From contig OZ320323.1 in assembly GCA_976226885.1 (NCBI GenBank), positions 13,578,001 through 13,642,000 on the forward strand: a DNA stretch of 64,000 bases, in the 5' to 3' direction. The notes beneath the pieces are model-generated. The model saw only the letters and a program-made list of their open reading frames with translations, was not told where the DNA came from and made no database searches. The position numbers and the translations under genes were made by a program. Shown here in pieces: positions 3,401 to 44,873 of this stretch (positions are counted from its first letter, which is position 1; each line of letters opens with the position of its first letter). This DNA is from Iphione sp. A-MEVVRFRX5 (taxonomy: Eukaryota).

Positions 3401-6400
3401 CCTTCTTCTCCGTCTCCAGTGGAAGGTGGTCTATGAAATGCTCAAGGTACGCCCTGAAAGATTTGTCGATTGCATCTAATCATTCCAAAGGTTTGAAACT
3501 TGAAGGAAAAAACTCCACAAATTACATTGCTGTGGCTATAAACAATGTTGAAAAAAAAGAAAACAAGATTTAAGCAACGGTGTTGGTAGATCATTTTGGA
3601 AAAGTGCTTTCCATAAAAACGGCCACCATCATGATGGAAGATGTAATTTTGCTTCCTTTAATTTTGCAAAAACAAAAACGAAAATAAAGTCTACAACACT
3701 ACCATGGTCTCTTGGATGTAACATACCTGCCAAACTGGGGACAGTGATCCAAATAGTCAGCAGCGACCTGCCATAGACTGCAACAGGAGGTTACAACAGA
3801 ATCAGTTTGAGTGGTGCTGCTTCATGACAAGCCACAAGCTGGCAACTCAGTTAAAGCTGAGTGGATCATGTCACGGATATGGCTAAGCAAGTCTACCTTC
3901 GCACATCGCATGCGAAGGGGAGTGTAATGCGTATGTTTTGGTGCCTGACTGTTGGTCAGTGTGCAAGTACTGTATGTGTAGCAGCCCGTGTCAAGCGAAA
4001 CTGACTGGCTACCTATTTACCGCACAAGAGCATGCAGACAAACTGACATATGTTAATATCTGATTCGTGTCTACAGTCTTCAAGATATGGTATCATCAGG
4101 ACTCCATTGTGGGAGAACATGCTCCGTAAATTTAAGAGCATCAGGTCGAATCCTGATGCCATATTCTCAATCAACGAGTGAAAAAAAGTTCTGTGTTCAA
4201 GCACACAGGACTTGTTGTATCATCACCATCAGCGCCCCTCACCATGCTCATCAAGTCTATGATATAGGGAGAAGGAAATGACAGAATAAAAGAGAAAAAA
4301 AGGCAATACGATACCTTAAAACAACCAAAGATTACGGGGAAAGGTGGACACTAACATTGTGGATGCAGAGATGTAAGGTTGGAGACATACCTTTGATGGG
4401 ACATGAGGCCTGTTGCATATTCTAGGAGGAGAAATTCGCGAAGGTTGGACCCGAAGCTGGAACAGAAGATCAGTTATTCTATTAACTATTCACTGGATGC
4501 TCCTTTCTCAATGCTAAAAAAAGGTTTACTTTCTGGACACTACAGTATCCGACACAAAGGTTCTGGAATCTGAAGTGTCCACACTACAGCCAAAGTGTAT
4601 ACATACAAAGAAGAATACGGTTTGCTCTGTTCGGATTCAAGCAAGATTGCAGAATCGCCTGATAGCTGAGGCGTGTATTTTTTATTTTTTTTTAAACTTT
4701 TATTTACACTGGAGCTGAAATATACAATATGTATTTGGGATCCAGTTTATACCATCTCTTGATACTTGTATGATATTTACAGGTGATCACGACAATATGG
4801 GATGAGATCAATGGTAAGGTGACTCATGGGCTGATGGTGCCAGTTCATAGTGTCGGTCGTGTTGGTGTTCTGAGTACATAATTCCTGACATTACTTGACA
4901 GGATATCATCCTGTTTGAAGATGTGATTTGAAAGGGTATCACCCTTCTTTCATATCAGCTGCTTCGTCACCACTTCCAAGGGAATCTCCCTGTTCGTGGA
5001 TCAGTTACTTCATTACGGTACCCGCAAGTTGGCTTTGACCGAACACTGTAGCCTACGCATTTTCAGTTTACGCAATAATTGTTTCTTTGGGAGATTTGTA
5101 TCGGTTATTGATAGTTTCTTCTTCCAATAGCAACTAAACCTGTACTGTATTGAATCTCTGAAACGTTCCTTGTGAGGAGCATCATACAACATCAGTCCCC
5201 TGCGGTTTCCTTCTCTAGTCATACGTCCCCCTCTATCAGTTCTTTCAGATAGTCGAAAGATCCCTAGGCCAACCCTCACCAACGTTGTGTCTACATAGCT
5301 TCTAACCTCATTTTCCACAATATCCCGGTCTATCCTCCTATTCATTGCAACGGCATATATCCTTCGTCGTAGCGTAACATATTTCATGTATGTGCTAGAT
5401 GTCTGAGAGCTATATAAGAACAGTCCGTAATTTATCACCGACAGTATCATAGTTGTCGCCAGTCTGGTTGCCAAATCTTTGCTCAAGTACTTCCTAATTT
5501 TCACAAAATGCTGCAGTTTATTATACCCTTTATGTACTAGCCTTTGCAAATGGTTTCTATACGATAGTTTCGTGTCCAAGATAATCCCTAAATAATTGAA
5601 TGATTTCACAGTCTCAAGCAGTCGATTGTCATATTTTAGATTCACATCTGTGGTGTTTGTTCGATACCCAAATTTCATAACCTTTGTTTTAGCAATGCTT
5701 ACTTTAATCTTATTGTTGTGGGACCATAGTTTCAGACGATTCATATCATGTTGTAGGCCCTCTATCGCATCATTTAATGTCACTCCGTGAGCAATCAGAA
5801 CCAAGTCATCAGCGTACAATATCACATCTGAGTCTAGTATACTGTGTACTAGGTCATTAATATATATGACAAAGAGCAACGGACCTAAAATTGATCCTTG
5901 CGGCACACCGCACGTAACATCCATGGTACTAGACAGAGTTCCATTAACCTTGGTTATCTGTTTCCGCCCCATCAGGTATGCCTTTATCCACACATAATAA
6001 CTCCCTAGATGGTAGTCCTGTAGCTTCCTTAGTAAAATTTCATGGCACACACTATCGAACGCCTTCTCAAAATCGATGAAAGCCCCCACGACGTGTTCCC
6101 GATTATTCAGATAGCCATGTATTAGTTGATTTAATTTACTGACAGCCATTTCTGTACCACGGCCTCGTCTGAAACCATATTGTTGTCTACAGAACAAATC
6201 ATTATTCTCAAAATGGTCATATTCTAGTGTGGACTATACGTTCTAATACCTTGTTAACCATATTTAGAATGCTAATAGGGCGATAATTACTTGGTTGATT
6301 TGGATCCCCTTTTTTGTATATTGGCGTAACTACAGTACACTCCCTGCCTGCGGACACGTCTCGGAAGCGGACACGTCTACAATGCGGACGATTTTACGCA

Positions 6401-7008
6401 GAACGAAATGATTTGCTATTGTTTCCTATTATAAGCTGACGTCTCTAATGCGGACGGCAAAATTTAGTGAACGCCTCCCTGTGGACGAGGTGTTGTCGCA
6501 CGAATTTGGGGCTCCAGGGAAACCACAGAAGTGCTTTTCAAAGGTAGATATGAATAACCCCTGTGGACGAGGTGTTGTTGCGCGAATTTGGGGCTCCAGG
6601 GAGACTACAGAAGTGCTTTTCAAAGGTAGATATTGATAACCCCTGTGGACGAGGTGTTGTCGCGCGAATTTGGGGCTCCAGGGAGGCTCCAGAAGTCATT
6701 TTTCAAAGGTAGATATGAATAACCCCAGTGGACAAGGTGTTGTCGGGCAAATTTGAGGCTCCAGGGAGGCTCCAGAAGTCATTTTTTAACTGGTCAATTT
6801 CAGTACTTTTAGGACTTTTACTGGTCAAATTCAGTACTTTTAGGACTTTAACTGGTCAAATTCAGGACTTTTAGGACTTTTACTGGTCAAATTCAGTACT
6901 TTTTGGACTTAAACTGATTGAATTAATTTATAGAGAGAGAGGGAGAAAGGGATTTCATTTTCTAGTTTGACCCCTCCTTAGGCGGGCAGATGTGCATGTA
7001 TATCCTTT

Positions 7009-7064
<56 letters not shown>

Positions 7065-10000
7065 GGAGTTCATTTTCTAGTTTGAACCCCTGGTCCGATC
7101 TCCAATGCGGACGCGTCTACAATGCGGACGATTTGAAGCAGAACAGAGGGTGTCCGGAATCAAGAGAGTGTACTGTATTCCCAACTTAAACTCCTCCGGT
7201 ATTATGCCTTGCCATAGGGATTGAGTGAACATGTGCCGGAATACCTCAACGTTTCGTGTCATAAAAATTTTTAATAATGCCGACGGTAATATACTAATCC
7301 CACTCGATTTGTTACCATGCATCGATCTTATCGATTGTAGTACTGTTTCTTTAGTCAACCCTTCATAGTTTAGGCGGCAGTCAATCCTGTTTTCCTGATG
7401 TTTGTAAGGTTCTTTCATATCCTCTAATATTCTCGAACCAACTGTCGCAAAGAAACAGTTTATCTTGTCTGCTGCTTGCTTGTCAGTCATTATTTTCTCA
7501 TCGTCTGATCGCATCAGTATCTCCGTATAAACTTGACTGTAGCCAAAATTCCTTTTTATCACTTGCCAAAAACGGGTTGGATTTGTTTTATTTGCTACCA
7601 ACTCCCCTTCAATATACCCTTTCCTCGATATAGTTAGCTGTTTCCTAACATTGGACATAGCAATGTGATGCTCTAGCTTGCACTCCAACTTACCAGTTTT
7701 GTTGTATTCTTCCCTGATACGATTTCTTTTAGAAATTAATTCGTGTAACTCCCTAGTCATCCAAGGCACTGTCGTTCTGGGGCACCGCCCCGTCTTTACA
7801 GGACATAGTTTATTAACTAGGTGGACTAGGTAGTAGTATATTACATACCAAATTTGTTGTACATCGTTCATTGCTAGTAAGGAGGTTTGCTCGAAGCTAG
7901 TTGATTCCTTAACAAATGTCTCTTCTGTCAGTCGCTTTTTGGATCTATATTTACGCTTCACCCTATCTAGCCGTATACGTGTTTCCAGAGTTATTGTGAT
8001 TTTTCTATGATCACTAAAGCCGCTGTTACTAACATTTATATGTAAATGTTTAGGTAGGATATTTCCCAGGACTAAGTCAATTGTACTTGAGGACAGTTTT
8101 CCTATTCTGGTCAGCTCCGTTACATACTGTGTTAATAGATTCTCAGCAGCAAACTCCTTCAATTTTCTGGTAAAAACGTTAGCTTTGTTTGCCCAATTTA
8201 TGTTATAATCCCCCATTATCAGAATATTAGTACGCCTATTTTCTCCTCGTAATTCAGCAATGTCAGATCTTAATTCTTCTAAGCCCTGTGATACATTCCC
8301 CCGTGGCGGCCTGTATATATTGCCAAGTAGAATCCGTTCATGGTTTTGTTCAATCAATAACCATTGCCTCTCCAAATGTTCCGTTATCTTGCTAGTATTC
8401 GATACGTAATGGGCACTTTCAGATAATTTATTGGTAACGTATATCACCAGCCCCCCTCCTCGTTTACATTTCCTATCCAGACGTATGCATCTATAACCAG
8501 TTATCTCCAGTAAACTCGCAGGTATAGAAGATTGCAACCAGCTCTCACTAAAGAAGTAAATATCAGATTTTGTTGTGTTAATCATGCTCAATAGTTCCTC
8601 CCAGTTCTTGAGAATACTCCGTACATTAAGAATTTCAATATTTAGCGATATCATCTAAAGGATAGCCAAATTGTATGGTCCCACGATGTTAGGCGATGAG
8701 ATGAAAGCCCACCCGGATGAATAAAGTTGAGTGGTCCAAAGAAAAGGAAATCAGTATGCCGTAACATACAGGATAGAAATGACACCCGTTTCACAGCAAT
8801 TTGATGAACACGTGTTCCACCAATAAAAGGACATAGTTAAACAATTGCATCTCATCCACAAATGTAGTATGTGTTGTGGTAACATATATAGCGCACAATC
8901 AACCAGTGTAGCTTCCCCTTTATTTATATAGCACAATATACTGCTAGCGTAACAGGAGAACACAAACAATCAATATAGGGTATTTTCAGTGTCCGAATCA
9001 GTGGATCAAATAACACCAAGTGCAGTAATGTTCTTAGGTACGAGAGTTGTTTGTGCTTACTAAAGCATCATGATCTGAGTTAAACTTCTACTTATCTGAA
9101 TTGTTGTAAGTAGCGGTAGTATAGGTAGTCCTCAAATTCATAGAGTCTGCGTAGAGCGTTCTCAATACGGGTAACCGCTACTGGAACCCATATCGGCCGC
9201 AAATGACACCCATCGCGAAGTCGCGCGTATCGGTGCCTCCATCGTCCATTATGCCGACTGTGGATGGTTCTCATAGTCCAAGGCACAGGTACTCCGTTTG
9301 AGCCGTTCAGCTCCACGATTCTTCTGTTTAGGACGATCACTAGCCTGTTTATCAACAGTTGTATGCGTCGAGCAGAGCCGCCCCTATTCATGTAGCCATT
9401 AAGTTGATAGTTGCTCGTCGCGTAGTCCATACCAAACACCGTCGATATCATTATGTAACTGCCAGGGAACATATTCCTCAGCCTTTCGTAGGCAACCTGA
9501 TAGTCATGCATTATTTCCGATACTGCAGTATCCACCCGTTGGTACCTTGGTATGACATATCGAGTTGTTTGCCTGGGTCCACGAGACCGAAACAAATTTG
9601 TCATGTTATTTCCGCCAACCCATAGCACCACCGCCCACGGTACATATGGGACCAGTGTTCCCTCAAAGCGATTTATCACATCCAATATCCTTGCTCCGGG
9701 ATAGAAGTATACCGACACTCTCCATCTTGGATCTCTATAGTAACCAGCAGTTCCTCTCCCATGGCTGCTAGACAAAATAATTACTCGGCGGACCATTTCT
9801 GAGTTTCTGCGTAGACATGAGTCGCACGTGTGCAGATATGTTCGGTCACCGGCAGTACTGCAATTTCAAATCTCGCGCATGCGTATATTTGTTTTTCAGA
9901 CAACACTGTTCTCATTCAGGCGTAGCCACTCTGGTGTCCGACATCCAAAAATAGCCAGACGCACTATTCTGTTTCCATCTGTGGGTCTGCTGTTCCAATT

Positions 10001-13000
10001 AGGTCCCGCCTGACCTCCTCTAGGAGTTTTCCGAGCATATTTTGTCCAGCATACGTTCCTTCGGTAATACTCTTTGATTGTGCTTCGACACCAACCCCCC
10101 AATAGGGATGCTTGCTTGCCTCAATTATAATATCCTTCCCTGTGGATATAAGTGTCTCGCGCAATTTGTCATTTTGGGCAAACTTGTGTCCCAGTATATC
10201 TTTCATAATGGCACGCTTCTCATCCTTCCACGGTTCACTGCTCTTGATCTGTTTTCTTACTCTCCTGAGTTTTTCGTTATCCGTGGTCTTTTCAATTAAT
10301 TCAGCAAGTTCATTTTTACCATGCTTAGTCGCTTTGGCCCAAGTGTAGGCCTGTTCTGCTGAGCTAAATTCCGTTTCACACCAGTCAATTTTACTGCTAG
10401 TCAAATTCGAGAACGGGGCTCCCTCTCCCTGGACTATCACCTTTCCATCCTTGGCCTGTTGTCTGGCATTAGCCAGGCTGTATTCCTCCGGCAATTTGTC
10501 CAGGGAGTCATAACGATACCATCTTTTATCGATTTCAATACGGTTCTCTCTTAATCTCACTGCCTTTGTTGGGGCAACCTCCTTCACCCTCTTGGCAATC
10601 GCTTGTAGGTCCATTCTCACCTTTCTCTCTTCAGGCGTTTCATCGTTGTTGAGCCAAATTTCTCTTCCTTTGAGTTTTCCTCTTGCTGCCATCACTTTCT
10701 CTTTCGCACACATTCTGGTAAATCGTACAAACATCCCTCGTCTTCCACCTTTGTCCTTTTTCGTTGTTCTGTACGCCAGATCAATGTCATACTCATATAT
10801 GTCAGTGCCCATGGTATCAAATAGGGCAACGCACATAGCCACACACGATTCCCCAGGTATTTCGTCAAGTCCATCAATGTATAGATTGTACTTGCGATTA
10901 AGGCGGTCACGACTAGTCTTACTTGCCCGAGTGTTGTCGGGGGCAACTTCTTTTCCAGATATCATTATAGCTGACATCATTTCCGCTTTAAGCTTCTTGT
11001 TTTCTGCTTTGAGGTTATCAACCTCACGCCGTAGTGCAGCAATCTCGCTGGTATTGTTTTTGACTGTATCCACTGTACTTTTGAGTGTTTCGTTCACTTC
11101 CTTCACCTCCTCTCTGATGCGTTTTGAGATATCGATCTGCTCTTGTGAGCTACGTTGCAACTCAGCAAACATCTCCTCCATAGATAGCGGGCCGCTTGAC
11201 CTTTTGTTATCAGTTCCATTTCCCGCATCACTGCGTACAGTGTCTTCACCTGTGTCATTTGGCCCCCGTGGGCGTTTCCTAGATGTTGAACGGCGGCGGT
11301 CGGAGGCACTTACACTATCAAGGTCTCTTCTTGGGCGTTCTGCAGTTTCCATCCTTATCAGGTTGTATTCACATATACACCTAAGCGATTTCGCGGTGAA
11401 TGTTTCCACAGACTGTGTGTACTAGAGCGTGCTGCTGTCCGTAGGTACCCTTCTATTTATAGCACATTCAACGTCTCTACGTGTGCACCGGTGGGCCCTG
11501 CGCAGGTAACATTTGAAAGTTACTCAATTATCGCTTTCTTCAACAAACTTTCCTTTACCTCAGGCAAACGTGCGTTATTAGCACTTTTCTTACCGTCAGG
11601 CCAGTCACATTGAGTTAAACTTGGTATTCACGGTTTTTGTTTTGTCCGGCAATTCTTATAAAATGTAATGCTCACCTTCTTGTCTGCGAGCGGTGATCGG
11701 GACAACCGTACTCACCTAGGCGCCATTGATACCGGCGCATTCGCTAACGCCCCGGGCGCCGGCGGCCGACAGGGTCGTCTCGCCCAGCGCGCAAGCGCCT
11801 AGCGTGCCGGTAGTGGTTGACCCTACTGAGTCACCACAGGCAGCTACCACAGGTATCATGGACACACCAACAGACACAGTACTGAGGGAGCATTCTACCA
11901 CCTCTGTACTGGTCTGTTTAGTCTTTTTAGCAGATCTACCAGAGGAAGATCTCTTGCCTCTCTTCTGCTGCCTGGGCTGCTCTACTGGCATGCCCATGAT
12001 AGAGGAGGCCAAGTCCATGATACCACAAATACAAAAGCAATAAACACAAAATCAACAAAGCAAAGTTGAAAAAATACTCCCTTTGGTGATCCTGATAGCA
12101 ATAGAAATAGCAGAAAGAAAGAACAGTGACAGAACAGTAAGAATTCTAAGACAGGTCTGAACTGGGTGACTGCTAGACTAAAAGTGACAACAACCAAGAT
12201 GGCTGACTGTGGTGGCGCCACTGGGCTGTATCTCAGGGAGACACCTAGTGTCCTATGCTGGTACTAAAGTTTTGTTCTGTCTAGAGTCTTTTAAAGATTC
12301 TGGGATCTCTCCTATTGTGAAGGTCTATATGCATGGGAATATGAGGCTTTGTCAGGTTCTTGGGTCTCCCTAAAAGCCAAGAGGTGTGCAGAGAAATATA
12401 ATGCTTTGTCCCATTAGCATTCAATACAAACTACTAAACGATACATTTAAGATATAATCACTTACTTCAGTGTTTGCGACTCCAGCATATCACAGTGATG
12501 CAACAGGTCTGTCAGGTGAGCCACAAACCACCAGCTCCCGCAACTCGAGCTGAATTAATAACATAAAACAAATCTTGAATCATATGACAATTCTTCTTCA
12601 TTATATATGTTAACTTATAACCCAAATAAAAAGGGTCTTACACTTATTTCATGACGATGTTATTTTCAAAACAATGCTAGAATGTTTGCCTACCGACCTA
12701 TACTCAAACAAATCTGACAGGAGGGCAAAATGAATGAGAAAACTATAGGATACCACTGTCTATCGAAGGACACGGGCACTGGGTGATTTGGTAAGTGGCA
12801 TTCCTAACCCACCTGGCCTCCTTGATAACCTGATGAATGTCAAACTCGAGTGTAGCCAGCAGGATGTGGTCCCAAGCCTGTAGATGGGCACTGCCACCGT
12901 ACGCATTGATGCAGAACTGGGCGTGGTACTGGACATCGATGGCCTTCACGGATGGGTTGTGGTAGAGTAGGCGTGTCACCAGCATGCAATACCAGCTGCC

Positions 13001-16000
13001 ACACAGGTCACGGAGCTCCATCAGAACCTGGTCCTCACCACACAGGATCTTCACGAATAAATAAAGCAATAGGATCAACAGCATGAACTGTAGTGTGAAA
13101 CCAGCTGACATAATAAAACCTGTCAGAAACCAGTAGATTGATATAAAACTGACATAAGCATGTAGCAAGGAAATATTTCTTATCGGAGATATGAAAACAT
13201 ATGTAAAAAGATATATACTTGAGGTTATAAAAATGTTGAGAGCATAAGAAAATATCATTGACCTAGTGAATGACTCTCATGTTAGAAGAAATATTATCCA
13301 GCCTTGAGCAACTCAGTCAAACACTAGTCCTCTCTCCAAACATCTGATTATGGACAATGTACCTGTAACACTTGGCACATGTACCCATCTAAAATTCTTA
13401 GGGTAGTCAACTTTTCGAAAACAACTAAAAACAAAATAGTTCAGATCACACTTAAATAAAGGCCTAAACTGATCCCATACCCGGCATATTGTTTGCAGTT
13501 TTTTGTCCACAGCAAAGACACCACTACTATATTCTGTCATGCACTCCTCCTGCCAGTGTCTCCACTTCATCTGGAACTCTCCCATGGACTGCCCGTTGAA
13601 CAGCTGTCAAACATAAGGAGTTTCATTTCATTCATTTATTAAAAACACATCGGAACTCAACTTATCTCTACCAGCTTTCTTTTCTAATTGTTTATTTTGT
13701 TGTAATTGTCAACTATGATTCCACTTCTATCTGAAATTCTGCCGTCCATCGCTGTTTGAGCAGCTGTCAATTCCATGTGTCAGATGCTTCATTTTATTGT
13801 ATTATCTAGAACAGAAAAGTTGTATCTACCGTGAATACTCCTCTTTTCTGTACCGGTCAACATCACTCCTTACATGTAATGTTCTTATGAACCTGCATCA
13901 TTTACTTACTGCAAAGAGAGGCATCTTTCTCAGTAAGGTGTCCATGACAACATGAGCATCAGATCCTGCACTTGCATGACGTGACAACATCTTCCTGGCC
14001 TCCTCCACGCGTCCTTGGAGAACATAGCAGTATATCTATAGGGTGGAAATGAAACACATATGATAAACGCGTAGACTGTCTTAACTATAAAATCAAATTC
14101 TAAACTGTAACGCTCCCTGCACAGATACTCCCCATATCCCTAAGTGAGACCAGGCACAGGTCACAATTTGCCTTCACAGATGAGAAATACCTTCGAGCCC
14201 ACTGACTACTCCCCTTATCAACACAGTCCCTACTCAACCACACCAACGGAGACCATAGTCATTATTTCTCATCTGTAAGAAGGAGGACCTTCTGTGACCA
14301 TATTATCACTAAGTAATTATAGTTCTGCTCCAGTCTCTTCTGGGGTTTATTCCAATGGTGAGTAATAGAACCTAAACACTGGTTTACATGTATATTGGTA
14401 GAACGTCAGTATAATAGACGATCTATGAAGGCAAATGATTCAAGCGACTCTGTACATCCGTGAACCTGATTTATCACGTTAGGAAACTCACCGCGTCCCA
14501 GTAGCTGGGATGATCTTGTGGTGGATCATGTTCGATGGCCTGCTTTGCAAGATGCTCGCCCTCCAAAAAGTGCCAACGCATCCATTCCAGAAGCTGCCCC
14601 AATACAGAGCCACCTGGGAGGGGAAAAAATGCTCATACAGTCAGACCTCAAGTAATCGAATCTCCTGTGTTTCCAGTGATCTTCTCGGGTTAACAAAGCA
14701 GTCAGATAATTCACACGTGAAAATTCATGAAAATGGTTATGCTGTGAAAATTCATCCAGATAACTCTGTAAATCCAGATATAGGATGATGATGTTTGACT
14801 GCATATAGTGTACAGTGTTTCCTTTATTTTTCATTATGGCCATGGGGCGTTTAATACCTAATTGTCCTTTAATTTTCACTAAATTGATCCTTACTGCTAC
14901 GGTGCTATTCGTGTGTTTTATTTGACTAGATGTTCCTACTATTTCTGTGAAGAGTAAGGTAGACAATACTATGGGAATGGTACAATGTTGAGATCTTAAT
15001 ATAGCGTAATAATATACAATATCCTTGCGGCAGTCAATTTAACATTCCTAAGACCATATTACAGAGGAACATTTGTTTTAAGCCAAAAGTTCAATAACTA
15101 ATGCTTTTTTCACGCGATATCATTTAGAAATTCACATACTAGGCTGAACATCAATGAAGAGAATCTCTGCCAGACTCCAAACAAGTTCTGTCATATCAAA
15201 CAACTGAAGCTGTGCCTCGTAGTCGTACTTCTCTGTGCATCCATCCTGGTCACTCTTTTCTGTAAACAACACAAAATGACACTCACTAATCATATTTGTT
15301 AGTAACTAGTGAAAATTGGTGGAGCTCTCTCTAGAAGAAACACCTGTAAATATGTAACCAGACCATTACCAGACACCTCCAAATCCATCTAGTCTTATCT
15401 GGCTCCACATACTCTATTAACAACAGTAAACAGAGATACATAAGAGTCAGACTCACTTGAGGCAGTTTGCAGGTCCATTAAACAAGCTTTGATGACAGAG
15501 CGATACTCTCGACTGAACTTGACAAGCCTAAAATAAAACATTGAGATAAGCAACTACTAAGGACAAATTAGAAGTATAACTAATAGTAATACGTTATCAT
15601 TTTTGTGAATTAGACAATGCTCATTTTGATTTTAGCTGTATTTATGACTTATAAAATCTTAATATTTGTTCCTTTCATACAACAGCACACTTACTGAGCT
15701 TTTTCCAGGCTACTTGAAGCTTGTGGTGAACATTTTTGAAGTTTTAAAAATATATCTGAAAATGGATGGAAGGGTAAAATCTTATGTGGAGATGTTTTGT
15801 AGGTATGTGACTATATATGACCTGTTACAAGAATATGAATGTCAATACATGTACTGTTTAATGTGCCTTTCCTTATCTGTCTTAGATAAAACACTCTGAA
15901 AAGAACATTTTTTTTCCAAACTGGACTACATTTTGTTTTGTATGATTGTACTACTTATTCCAATGTACTATCCACCATACTTTAAGGTGAATGGACCTAT

Positions 16001-18394: not shown

Positions 18395-44873
<26,479 letters not shown>

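What the first reader, a model, noticed from the sequence alone, without database searches (positions are those of the whole stretch)
9964..11352. LINE ORF1p fused to a NADAR (YbiA-like) domain: a possible anti-ADP-ribosylation module on a retrotransposon
Seen: an L1-type coiled coil-RRM-CTD continues without a stop into a complete NADAR motif set (FSN, SAEQAY..AKA, KF.QN..LR..L..TG, EAS...YWG.G, G.N.LG.LL.EVR). Established: NADAR proteins include the YbiA N-glycosidase and the antitoxins of DarT1 that remove ADP-ribose from guanine in DNA; pierisin/CARP-1-type animal enzymes also ADP-ribosylate guanine. Inference: tethering NADAR to the RNP-coating protein could strip ADP-ribose from element RNA or nascent single-stranded cDNA and so counter a host restriction. 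Caveat: the usual Asp of the EASx(x)DxxWG motif reads His (CAT, one change from GAT) here, so this copy may be inactive or binding-only.
Basis: partly seen in the sequence, partly recalled or inferred. Interest (0 to 1): 0.93.

Follow-up and report, generated by a model that had tools for sequence, protein, structure and literature searches.

The report
LINE ORF1 protein fused to NADAR
A jumping gene (LINE retrotransposon) in an animal genome has its RNA-coating protein joined to an enzyme domain that in bacteria and phages strips ADP-ribose off DNA and RNA bases; the fusion is real, belongs to a large and almost unstudied family, and its function is still untested.

Summary
On the minus strand, 11352->9964, one uninterrupted 462-aa ORF encodes a disordered basic N-terminus, a ~95-residue coiled-coil helix, an L1-type RRM and CTD, then a YbiA-type NADAR domain with no linker. 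Evidence: Pfam NADAR E=2e-27; AlphaFold pLDDT 88; Foldseek matches to NADAR 8BAU, YbiA 2B3W and the human L1 ORF1p trimer.

It is ORF1 of an APE/RT LINE. The ORF2 of this copy is broken by a ~720-bp insertion and a frameshift. An SGNH-esterase-like ORF lies between ORF1 and ORF2.

The fusion is not unique. A profile of the non-NADAR half alone retrieved 150 cluster representatives, and 131 carry NADAR at the same place. Eight relatives' contigs were examined: seven have APE or APE/RT ORF2s downstream, one in at least four genomic places.

The catalytic residues (E333, K340, E411) are 94-96% conserved, counting Lys or Arg at 340. NADAR is as conserved as the RRM and CTD.

One 2025 paper already notes NADAR in oyster Tx1 LINE ORF1s in a single sentence. 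The counter-restriction idea is plausible but untested.

The parts
9964..11352 (-). ORF1 of the LINE: 462 aa plus stop, intact. It is a type II (L1-like) ORF1p fused to NADAR.
11182..11352 (-). aa 1-57: disordered, basic and Ser-rich N-terminus, including [15 protein letters not shown]
   Evidence: pLDDT below 50; sequence
10894..11181 (-). aa 58-153: one long helix, the coiled-coil domain
   Evidence: DSSP helix 58-153 with pLDDT 86-98; many weak coiled-coil Pfam hits
10639..10893 (-). aa 154-238: RRM-like domain (beta-alpha-beta-beta-alpha-beta)
   Evidence: Foldseek hits to 2W7A, 2YKO and generic RRMs
10462..10638 (-). aa 239-297: L1-type C-terminal domain (CTD)
   Evidence: Foldseek hits to 2YKO/2YKP/2YKQ and 2LDY spanning RRM plus CTD
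9988..10461 (-). aa 298-455: YbiA-type NADAR domain. Catalytic-site equivalents are E333 (10356-10354), K340 (10335-10333), E411 (10122-10120) and W418 (10101-10099).
10108..10110 (-). Codon CAT = His415, at the position of D130 in the Phytophthora NADAR. The position is variable in the family.
9092..9796 (-). 234-aa ORF between ORF1 and ORF2: SGNH/GDSL esterase-like. It has SSSHG, FYPGAR, VGGNN and DGCH blocks.
   Evidence: Pfam Lipase_GDSL_2 E=4.6e-4, below cut-off. Weak alignment to the ZfL2-1 esterase 4C1B at the FPGAR and VGTND blocks, E 0.4. No relatives found. The single-sequence AF2 model is unusable.
7077..8654 (-). ORF2, first piece: APE endonuclease and the linker to RT
   Evidence: PF14529 E=1.6e-9; 25-26% identity to ORF2s of relatives
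6395..7113 (-). Repeat-rich insertion that interrupts ORF2. It contains (AG)25, a 31-bp unit x4.3 and an 82-bp unit x3.7. It is flanked by a direct duplication, with an exact 21 nt at 7134-7114 and 6394-6374.
5013..6393 (-). ORF2, second part: reverse transcriptase. It is read in two frames, with a frameshift near 6220-6233.
   Evidence: RVT_1 E=7.6e-31; frame analysis; 34% identity to the L004 ORF2
4676..4704 (-). AATAAA followed by an A-rich run: tentative 3' end of the element
   Evidence: This is inference only; no significant target-site duplication was found.

Best explanation
The ORF is the ORF1 protein of an APE-type LINE that sits in a metazoan genome next to Nup85 exons.

Shown:
- Its architecture is a disordered basic N-terminus, a coiled coil, an L1-type RRM and CTD, then a YbiA-type NADAR joined directly to the CTD.
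- The fusion characterises a large, old ORF1 family.
- Seven of the eight relatives' contigs examined have an APE or APE/RT ORF2 downstream, one of them in several genomic places.
- The two halves co-diverged.
- The NADAR catalytic set (Glu, Lys, Glu plus Trp) is about as conserved as the essential RNA-binding domains.

Inferred:
- ORF1p of LINEs binds the RNA that encoded it and travels with it to the integration site. The fusion therefore concentrates a base-ADP-ribose N-glycohydrolase on the element's RNA and on the single-stranded DNA of target-primed reverse transcription.
- The most likely job is to erase ADP-ribose from guanine or cytosine bases of those nucleic acids, because such adducts would block reverse transcription or second-strand synthesis.
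- Whether the adducts come from a dedicated host restriction enzyme (pierisin/CARP-1-like or another ART), which would make this a counter-defence, is the least secure step.

This particular copy keeps an intact ORF1, but its ORF2 is broken, so it cannot move on its own.
For: Identity and architecture.

Family:
- A profile of the non-NADAR half only (A2) gave 18,978 hits at E<=1e-3 and 3,585 at E<=1e-10.
- 131 of the best 150 representatives carry NADAR immediately C-terminal.
- Pfam finds NADAR in 100 of 100 selected members.

LINE context in relatives (8 contigs examined):
- L002: APE ORF2. L001: the start of an APE ORF2. L008 and L010: ORF2.
- L004-L007: identical ORF1 plus a 964-aa APE/RT ORF2 at four listed places; the protein is on five contigs of one assembly.
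- L012 and L013/L014: ORF2 of 1146 and 1100 aa.
- L003: no ORF2 similarity detected.
- The window ORF2 is related to these in the same rank order as its ORF1.

Constraint on the domain:
- E333 is Glu in 96%, K340 is Lys in 87% plus Arg in 7%, E411 is Glu in 94%, and W418 is Trp in 92%.
- These map onto E43, K50, E125 and W133 of 8BAU. Mutagenesis of the E. coli C7 equivalents of E43, K50 and E125 shows they are needed for guanine-ADPr hydrolysis (PMC11543638).
- Mean pairwise identity is 0.325 for NADAR, 0.304 for RRM and 0.310 for CTD.
- A Mantel test between the halves gives r=0.60, with 0 of 999 permutations reaching it.
- The window copy is no more deviant than the family average: 4 of 40 conserved columns against a mean of 3.1.

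Biochemistry of NADARs:
- They remove ADPr from G and C on ssDNA and ssRNA. This includes YbiA-type enzymes and a sponge enzyme (PMC12945103; PMC11125620).
- T4-like phages carry orphan antitoxin-like enzymes that neutralise DarTG1 (PMC11825919 abstract).
- Animal guanine-ADP-ribosylating toxins exist: pierisin, and CARP-1 of clams.
Against: - No activity, substrate or host transferase was observed, and none of these can be tested with these tools.
- By sequence the domain passes the NCBIfam model named 'riboflavin biosynthesis intermediates N-glycosidase' (TIGR02464). It is far below the cut-off of the NADAR anti-phage model NF053876 (39.5 bits against 240).
- It is the Glu (YbiA) type, not the Asp type linked to DarT1.
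- E. coli YbiA is active in vitro but does not rescue DarT1 or YarT toxicity in cells (PMC11125620). In vitro activity therefore does not settle the physiological target.
- C. elegans SNA-3, which has three NADAR domains, works in trans-splicing, so an RNA-processing role is open.
- The window copy carries His at the D130 position and Arg at the G78 position, both ligand-contact sites.
- Base ADP-ribosylation of retrotransposon RNA or cDNA in animals has, to my knowledge, never been reported.
Confidence: 0.45

Rival explanations
1. The NADAR is an active enzyme selected in the LINE, but its substrate is not base-ADP-ribosylated nucleic acid. Alternatives are a small-molecule N-glycoside (as proposed for YbiA in riboflavin metabolism), an NAD-derived RNA end, or another RNA-processing step in RNP maturation.
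For: TIGR02464 'riboflavin biosynthesis intermediates N-glycosidase' scores above its curated cut-off. The NADAR protein SNA-3 acts in nematode trans-splicing (PMC11125620). [quoted passage not shown]
Against: A metabolic clean-up enzyme has no evident reason to be tethered to an RNA chaperone. Every NADAR subfamily tested so far, YbiA included, hydrolyses base-linked ADPr on DNA and RNA.
Confidence: 0.25
2. The NADAR serves mainly as an ADP-ribose reader or eraser that steers or stabilises the RNP at PARP-marked nicks and breaks. On this reading it helps target-primed reverse transcription rather than countering a restriction factor.
For: All ADPr-contacting positions (E, K, E, W) are conserved. 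The domain is rigidly packed on the CTD in a confident model. From my own knowledge, not tested here: PARP activity at L1 integration sites has been reported in mammals.
Against: Known NADAR substrates are N-glycosidic base adducts, not the protein- or phosphate-linked ADPr made by PARPs; macrodomains and ARH3 handle those (table in PMC12945103). Conservation of the catalytic Glu residues argues for turnover, not binding alone.
Confidence: 0.12
3. In this locus the ORF is a relic or a domesticated host gene. ORF1 survives by chance or under host selection while the element is dead, and the domain has no role in transposition here.
For: ORF2 of this copy is interrupted by a ~720-bp insertion and a frameshift. 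There is no second copy in the 64-kb window. This exact protein is not on record elsewhere.
Against: ORF1, the esterase ORF and both ORF2 pieces are otherwise open, which suggests a young copy. The ORF1 is no more deviant than the family average. Relatives are multi-copy with intact ORF2. This reading concerns one copy only and leaves the family-level function unexplained.
Confidence: 0.08

Closest known systems
NADAR-containing ORF1 proteins of Tx1 LINEs of Crassostrea gigas (Repbase), and NADAR in Pol of Ectocarpus Gypsy elements, as noted in PMC12477816
   Same: A YbiA-family NADAR domain sits inside a retrotransposon protein, and in the oyster case inside LINE ORF1. Function is unknown there too.
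   Different: That paper gives one sentence and no architecture, family size, catalytic-site analysis or ORF2 context. I could not compare sequences because Repbase is not available here, and I could not confirm that the window element belongs to the Tx1 clade. The window element also has a separate esterase-like ORF.
Human and mouse LINE-1 ORF1p (type II ORF1p; PDB 2YKO, 2YKP, 2YKQ, 2LDY, 2W7A)
   Same: Coiled coil, then a non-canonical RRM, then a CTD, placed upstream of an APE/RT ORF2. Foldseek probability is 1.00.
   Different: L1 ORF1p ends after the CTD and has no enzymatic domain. The sequence relationship is too weak for Pfam Transposase_22 in this protein; 2 of 100 family members hit it.
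YbiA-family NADARs (E. coli YbiA 2B3W; Phytophthora nicotianae NADAR 8BAU)
   Same: Same fold (TM 0.70-0.72). Glu in the last strand, and the Glu and Lys of the SxEQ...K motif are present. A profile of the ORF1 NADAR domains scores E=9.7e-30 and 1.6e-22 against them.
   Different: Those are stand-alone ~160-190-aa proteins. Here the domain is the C-terminal module of an RNA-binding, multimerising transposon protein.
NADAR antitoxin of DarT1 (DarTG1), and the orphan antitoxin-like enzymes of T4-like phages that neutralise DarTG1
   Same: Same superfamily. The phage case is the closest functional analogue: a mobile genetic element carrying its own eraser of nucleic-acid ADP-ribosylation.
   Different: DarT1-linked NADARs use an Asp two residues upstream of the conserved Glu, and phage gp30.3 proteins use a His. 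The window protein has Ile at the Asp position and Glu at the conserved position. There is no adjacent transferase. The only PADLOC hit is the candidate family PDC-M42C.
SGNH esterase of CR1/L2-type ORF1p (ZfL2-1, PDB 4C1B)
   Same: The only enzymatic domain previously characterised in an ORF1p (PMC3905857). An esterase-like ORF also sits in this element, between ORF1 and ORF2.
   Different: Different fold and chemistry. Here the esterase is a separate 234-aa ORF without a coiled coil, and its assignment is weak.
Viral macrodomains (coronavirus Mac1, alphavirus nsP3)
   Same: Conceptual analogue only: a replicating genetic parasite encodes an ADP-ribose eraser. This comes from my own knowledge; Mac1 is also listed as a hydrolase in the table of PMC12945103.
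   Different: Unrelated fold, with protein- and phosphate-linked ADPr as substrates.

Membership tests
NADAR superfamily, YbiA family | Sequence match above curated thresholds (Pfam PF08719; NCBIfam TIGR02464) | tested here: met
   PF08719 gives 97 bits against 35.1. TIGR02464 gives 95.4 bits against 73.7.
NADAR superfamily, YbiA family | [quoted passage not shown] | tested here: met
   AF2 pLDDT is above 94 over aa 298-450. Foldseek gives 8BAU at E 2.4e-8 and TM 0.72, and 2B3W at TM 0.70.
NADAR superfamily, YbiA family | Glutamate in the last beta-strand (E125 of the Phytophthora enzyme), plus the E43 and K50 equivalents | tested here: met
   E411, E333 and K340 align to them. They are 94%, 96% and 87% (plus 7% Arg) conserved in 100 family members.
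NADAR superfamily, YbiA family | Hydrolysis of an N-glycosidic ADP-ribose (or related) bond | not testable with these tools
   Needs an enzyme assay.
DarT1-associated NADAR antitoxin (BC4488 / DarG1 type) | Catalytic Asp in place of the Glu (D171 of E. coli C7, two residues before the conserved Glu) | tested here: not met
   The window reads I409-I410-E411, so there is no Asp. Definition taken from PMC11543638.
DarT1-associated NADAR antitoxin (BC4488 / DarG1 type) | Encoded next to a DarT1 (or other ART) toxin gene | tested here: not met
   The neighbours are an esterase-like ORF and an APE/RT ORF2. No ART domain appeared in any ORF scanned.
Type II (L1-like) ORF1p | Coiled coil, then a single RRM, then a CTD, in that order | tested here: met
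   Helix 58-153, RRM 154-238 and CTD 239-297 in a confident model. Foldseek hits 2YKO/2YKP/2YKQ, 2LDY and 2W7A. Definition taken from PMC4120745.
Type II (L1-like) ORF1p | Sequence match to Pfam Transposase_22 (PF02994) | tested here: not met
   No hit at E<=0.1 for the window protein. Only 2 of 100 family members hit it, best E 7.1e-6. The relationship is seen by fold, not by sequence.
Type II (L1-like) ORF1p | Trimerisation and RNA binding or chaperone activity | not testable with these tools
   Needs biochemistry.
APE-type LINE (non-LTR retrotransposon) | ORF2 with an APE endonuclease followed by a reverse transcriptase, downstream of ORF1 on the same strand | tested here: met
   PF14529 and PF03372 at 8654-7077 and RVT_1 at 6197-5013. 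The same layout occurs in L002, L004-L008, L010, L012 and L013.
APE-type LINE (non-LTR retrotransposon) | Multiple dispersed copies; target-site duplication; 3' A-rich or microsatellite tail | tested here: inconclusive
   There is one copy in the window. A relative is listed at four places and recorded on five contigs of one assembly. The A-rich end at 4693-4676 is tentative, and the 9-nt repeat is not significant.
Tx1 clade (the clade named in the prior report) versus the CR1/L2 group | Placement of the RT domain in a reference LINE phylogeny | not testable with these tools
   No reference RT set is available. The indirect signs are mixed. ORF2 lengths are 964-1146 aa with a PF14529-type endonuclease. 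L013 has an (ATTCT)n tail and L012 has a CCHC-like motif. The closest solved RT is human L1 ORF2p, at only E 1e-14.

The most novel reading that the evidence does not exclude
Animals restrict LINEs by ADP-ribosylating bases of the element's RNA or of the single-stranded DNA made during integration. A large, old LINE lineage answers by building a NADAR eraser into its RNA-coating protein. This would be a eukaryotic counterpart of the DarT1/NADAR and phage orphan-antitoxin conflict, and it would reveal a so far unknown layer of genome defence.
Probability: 0.22. Interest if true: 0.9.

Novelty: new member of a known kind. Interest (0 to 1): 0.6.

Why it matters
ORF1 proteins of LINEs are thought of as RNA chaperones. 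The SGNH esterase was described as the only enzymatic function found in them (PMC3905857). Here a second enzyme, of a family whose known chemistry is removal of ADP-ribose from DNA and RNA bases, is shown to be a fixed and catalytically conserved part of a large ORF1 family in animals.

The physiological role of NADARs in eukaryotes is an open question (PMC11125620). Whether nucleic-acid ADP-ribosylation acts on retrotransposons has, to my knowledge, not been asked. The family supplies natural, compact test objects for both questions.

The existence of NADAR in some LINE ORF1s has already been noted in print. What this work adds is the architecture, the size of the family, the conservation of the active site and the ORF2 linkage. 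It does not add the first sighting.

Tried and rejected
- Searching the NADAR domain alone in the word-indexed protein database found nothing. Searching with the 100-sequence profile returned only two proteins. Both outcomes reflect the word index, not absence.
- The exact window ORF1 is not on record in the contig index, so the source organism could not be read off.
- Sample and assembly accessions of relatives (ERR14368249, SRR25569770, ERZ26222911, GCA_013332695.1 and others) occur in no searchable paper. Cluster look-ups gave no names.
- The host is therefore known only as a metazoan. It is not human, because the Nup85 exon only partly matches human Nup85. Ankyrin/SOCS-box and HNOBA genes flank relatives.
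- LINE clade assignment failed for want of reference RT sequences. PDB gives only L1 and R2.
- The esterase-like ORF has no relatives in the fetched loci or in a metagenome scan. A single-sequence AlphaFold model had pLDDT 37.6 and was not used.
- The C-terminal extensions beyond NADAR in some relatives have no Pfam domain. The NADAR-less hits contain only coiled-coil matches and are mostly short.
- A target-site duplication was sought, but the best 9-nt match is expected by chance about one time in four by my estimate.
- I considered that ORF1-NADAR and esterase+ORF2 might be two adjacent elements. I rejected this. The window ORF2 is related to the ORF2s of NADAR-ORF1 LINEs in the same rank order as ORF1, and there is no second ORF2 in the window.
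Only column counts are given.

Full report
**What is in the sequence.** The ATG is at 11352 and the stop at 9966-9964, giving 462 codons with no interruption. Pfam places a NADAR domain (PF08719) at aa 314-451 with E=2e-27 and 97 bits against a gathering score of 35.1. NCBIfam TIGR02464, the YbiA-type model, scores 95.4 bits against a cut-off of 73.7. This is not a chance resemblance.

**The N-terminal half.** Pfam does not recognise an L1 ORF1 domain in this protein. An AlphaFold2 model built on 100 relatives is confident, with mean pLDDT 88.1 and pTM 0.73. It shows:
- a disordered basic N-terminus (aa 1-57);
- a single helix of about 95 residues (58-153);
- an RRM-like beta-alpha-beta-beta-alpha-beta unit (154-238);
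- a small alpha/beta domain (239-297);
- the NADAR fold (298-455), joined without a linker.

Foldseek against the PDB returns the Phytophthora NADAR 8BAU (E 2.4e-8, TM 0.72) and E. coli YbiA 2B3W. It then returns nine chains of the human LINE-1 ORF1p trimer (E 1e-6 to 2e-5, about 186 aligned columns), the RRM-CTD construct 2LDY and the central domain 2W7A. This architecture is the type II ORF1p of Khazina and Weichenrieder, known from the L1, CR1, L2 and R1 clades (PMC4120745).

**The element around it.** Several features follow ORF1 on the same strand.
- Esterase-like ORF: a 234-aa ORF at 9796-9092 carries the four SGNH-esterase blocks. It has a weak Pfam GDSL hit and a weak alignment to the ZfL2-1 ORF1p esterase 4C1B at the FPGAR and VGTND blocks.
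- ORF2, first piece: an APE endonuclease piece lies at 8654-7077.
- ORF2, second piece: a reverse transcriptase piece lies at 6393-5013.
- Damage to ORF2: it is interrupted by a roughly 720-bp insertion at about 7113-6395. The insertion is made of an (AG)25 run and 31-bp and 82-bp tandem repeats, and it is flanked by a direct duplication. ORF2 also changes frame near 6220-6233. This copy cannot be autonomous. I describe the lesions only and built no repaired or consensus sequence.
- 3' end: an AATAAA and an A-rich run at 4704-4676 may mark it. No convincing target-site duplication was found.
- Host context: two Nup85 exons lie just upstream on the same strand. One matches human Nup85 only partly, so the host is a metazoan and the contig is not human.

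**Is the fusion unique?** It is not. I searched 1.84 billion cluster representatives with a profile of the non-NADAR half only (264 positions). This gave 18,978 hits at E<=1e-3 and 3,585 at E<=1e-10. Of the 150 best representatives, which are mutually below 50% identity, 131 carry a NADAR domain immediately after the CTD by my own HMM. Pfam confirms NADAR in 100 of 100 that I selected. Most of the 19 without NADAR are short proteins that end where the match ends.

I looked at the contigs of eight relatives. Seven have an APE or APE/RT ORF2 downstream; the eighth, L003, showed no ORF2 similarity. One element (P0056) appears with identical ORF1 and an identical 964-aa ORF2 at four listed places, and the protein is recorded on five contigs of that animal assembly, so it looks recently active. 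The ORF2s of these elements are 27-29% identical to each other. The window ORF2 is 22-34% identical to them, in the same rank order as ORF1. ORF1 and ORF2 of the window therefore belong together. None of the relatives has the esterase ORF.

**Is the enzyme under selection?** A profile of 32 ORF1 NADAR domains aligns to 8BAU at E=9.7e-30. This allows residues to be mapped.

| Phytophthora NADAR | Window ORF1 | Conservation in 100 members |
|---|---|---|
| E43 | E333 | Glu 96% |
| K50 | K340 | Lys 87%, Arg 7% |
| E125 | E411 | Glu 94% |
| W133 | W418 | Trp 92% |

Mutagenesis of the E. coli C7 equivalents of E43, K50 and E125 shows they are needed for guanine-ADP-ribose hydrolysis (PMC11543638). 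Mean pairwise identity is 0.325 for NADAR, 0.304 for the RRM, 0.310 for the CTD and 0.156 for the coiled coil. Pairwise distances of the two halves are correlated (Mantel r=0.60, 0 of 999 permutations reach it). That fits one old fusion inherited along the lineage.

**The His caveat.** In the family that column reads D 64, N 22, S 7, H 3, C 3, G 1. The window protein departs from 4 of 40 strongly conserved columns, against a family mean of 3.1; 36 of the other 99 members depart at 4 or more. It shows no sign of decay.

**Which NADAR, and what it probably does.** The Glu in the last strand places the domain in the YbiA family. It is not the Asp-type family that accompanies DarT1, and it is not the His-type phage gp30.3 group (PMC11125620). 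PADLOC gives only a candidate family. The NADAR anti-phage NCBIfam model is far below its cut-off. It should not be filed as a DarT1 antitoxin.

What it may work like is a separate question. NADARs of all families tested, including YbiA-type enzymes and a sponge enzyme, remove ADP-ribose from guanine and cytosine on ssDNA and ssRNA (PMC12945103). T4-like phages carry orphan antitoxin-like enzymes that neutralise DarTG1 (PMC11825919). Guanine-modifying ARTs exist in animals: pierisin, and CARP-1 of clams.

LINE ORF1 proteins coat their own RNA and accompany it to the nick. Tethering therefore places the hydrolase on the RNA template and on the single-stranded DNA of target-primed reverse transcription. 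My best explanation is erasure of base-linked ADP-ribose from those nucleic acids.

| Claim | My estimate |
|---|---|
| Architecture as described | about 0.97 |
| The domain is a selected, active enzyme | about 0.85 |
| The substrate is base-ADP-ribosylated nucleic acid | about 0.45 |
| This counters a dedicated host restriction | about 0.2-0.3 |

Rival explanations:
- Another N-glycosidic or RNA-processing substrate. TIGR02464 is named for riboflavin intermediates, and C. elegans SNA-3 acts in trans-splicing.
- A role as an ADP-ribose reader at PARP-marked breaks.
- For this copy alone, a relic or a domesticated gene.

**Prior knowledge and novelty.** Searches for NADAR, YbiA or DUF1768 together with retrotransposon, ORF1 or LINE found one relevant paper. 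PMC12477816 reports NADAR in the Pol of Ectocarpus Gypsy elements. [quoted passage not shown] The systematic ORF1 survey of the Jockey superfamily does not mention it. The esterase paper calls the esterase unique among ORF1ps in having an enzymatic function.

The finding is therefore a new member of a kind that has been sighted but not studied. New here are the fold-level proof of the type II ORF1p-NADAR architecture, the size and age of the family, the active-site conservation, the ORF2 linkage, and the extra esterase-like ORF in this element. I could not decide whether the window element is a Tx1 or a CR1/L2-group LINE.

**Limits.** The source organism and the taxonomic range of the family are unknown, because the relatives come from unnamed Logan, ENA and NCBI assemblies. 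Only the 150 best representatives could be inspected. The run of N at 29922-30095 was left untouched. No step needed referral.

Noticed in passing
window 9092-9796 (-): A separate 234-aa ORF with SGNH-esterase blocks (SSSHG, FYPGAR, VGGNN, DGCH) lies between ORF1-NADAR and ORF2. If it is real, the element carries two accessory enzymes. It is absent from all relatives examined, and no homologue was found.
   Followed up: partly
window 6395-7113, with duplications at 7134-7114 and 6394-6374: A repeat-rich insertion inside ORF2: (AG)25, a 31-bp unit x4.3 and an 82-bp unit x3.7, bounded by a direct duplication whose exact core is 21 nt. Its nature (SINE-like, satellite or other) was not determined.
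   Followed up: partly
window 12746-13258 and 13316-13585 (-): Two exons of a Nup85 nucleoporin gene (Pfam E 2.4e-15 and 4e-3), one of which matches human Nup85 only partly. The LINE lies just downstream on the same strand, probably in an intron in sense orientation.
   Followed up: partly
window 31574-35393 (-): Three consecutive ORFs of 299, 656 and 338 aa. The middle one has a weak reverse-transcriptase match (RVT_1, E 3.5e-10). This is a different retroelement, with no similarity to the LINE studied here.
   Followed up: no
window 11716-12018 (-) and 11454-11461: Upstream of ORF1 on the same strand there is a 100-aa ORF rich in Ser, Thr, Gly and Ala with no Pfam match. A TATAAATA lies about 100 nt before the ORF1 ATG. 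Whether either belongs to the element's 5' region is unknown.
   Followed up: no
P0001, P0008, P0010, P0023, P0027, P0035, P0045, P0076, P0081, P0120 (relatives): A subset of ORF1-NADAR proteins continue for 150-300 residues beyond NADAR. These are acidic, Ser-rich tails with no Pfam domain. In L008 and L010 long non-coding spacers of 1.3 and 2.1 kb separate ORF1 from ORF2.
   Followed up: partly
L012:2031-5471 and L013:2334-5636 plus its 3' flank: The ORF2s attached to NADAR-ORF1s are heterogeneous. L012 has a C-terminal CCHC-like motif and 1146 aa. L013 ends in an (ATTCT)n tail. L004 and L008 have 964 aa. This hints that the ORF1 module is shared across, or has spread among, different LINE lineages.
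   Followed up: partly
   Followed up: no
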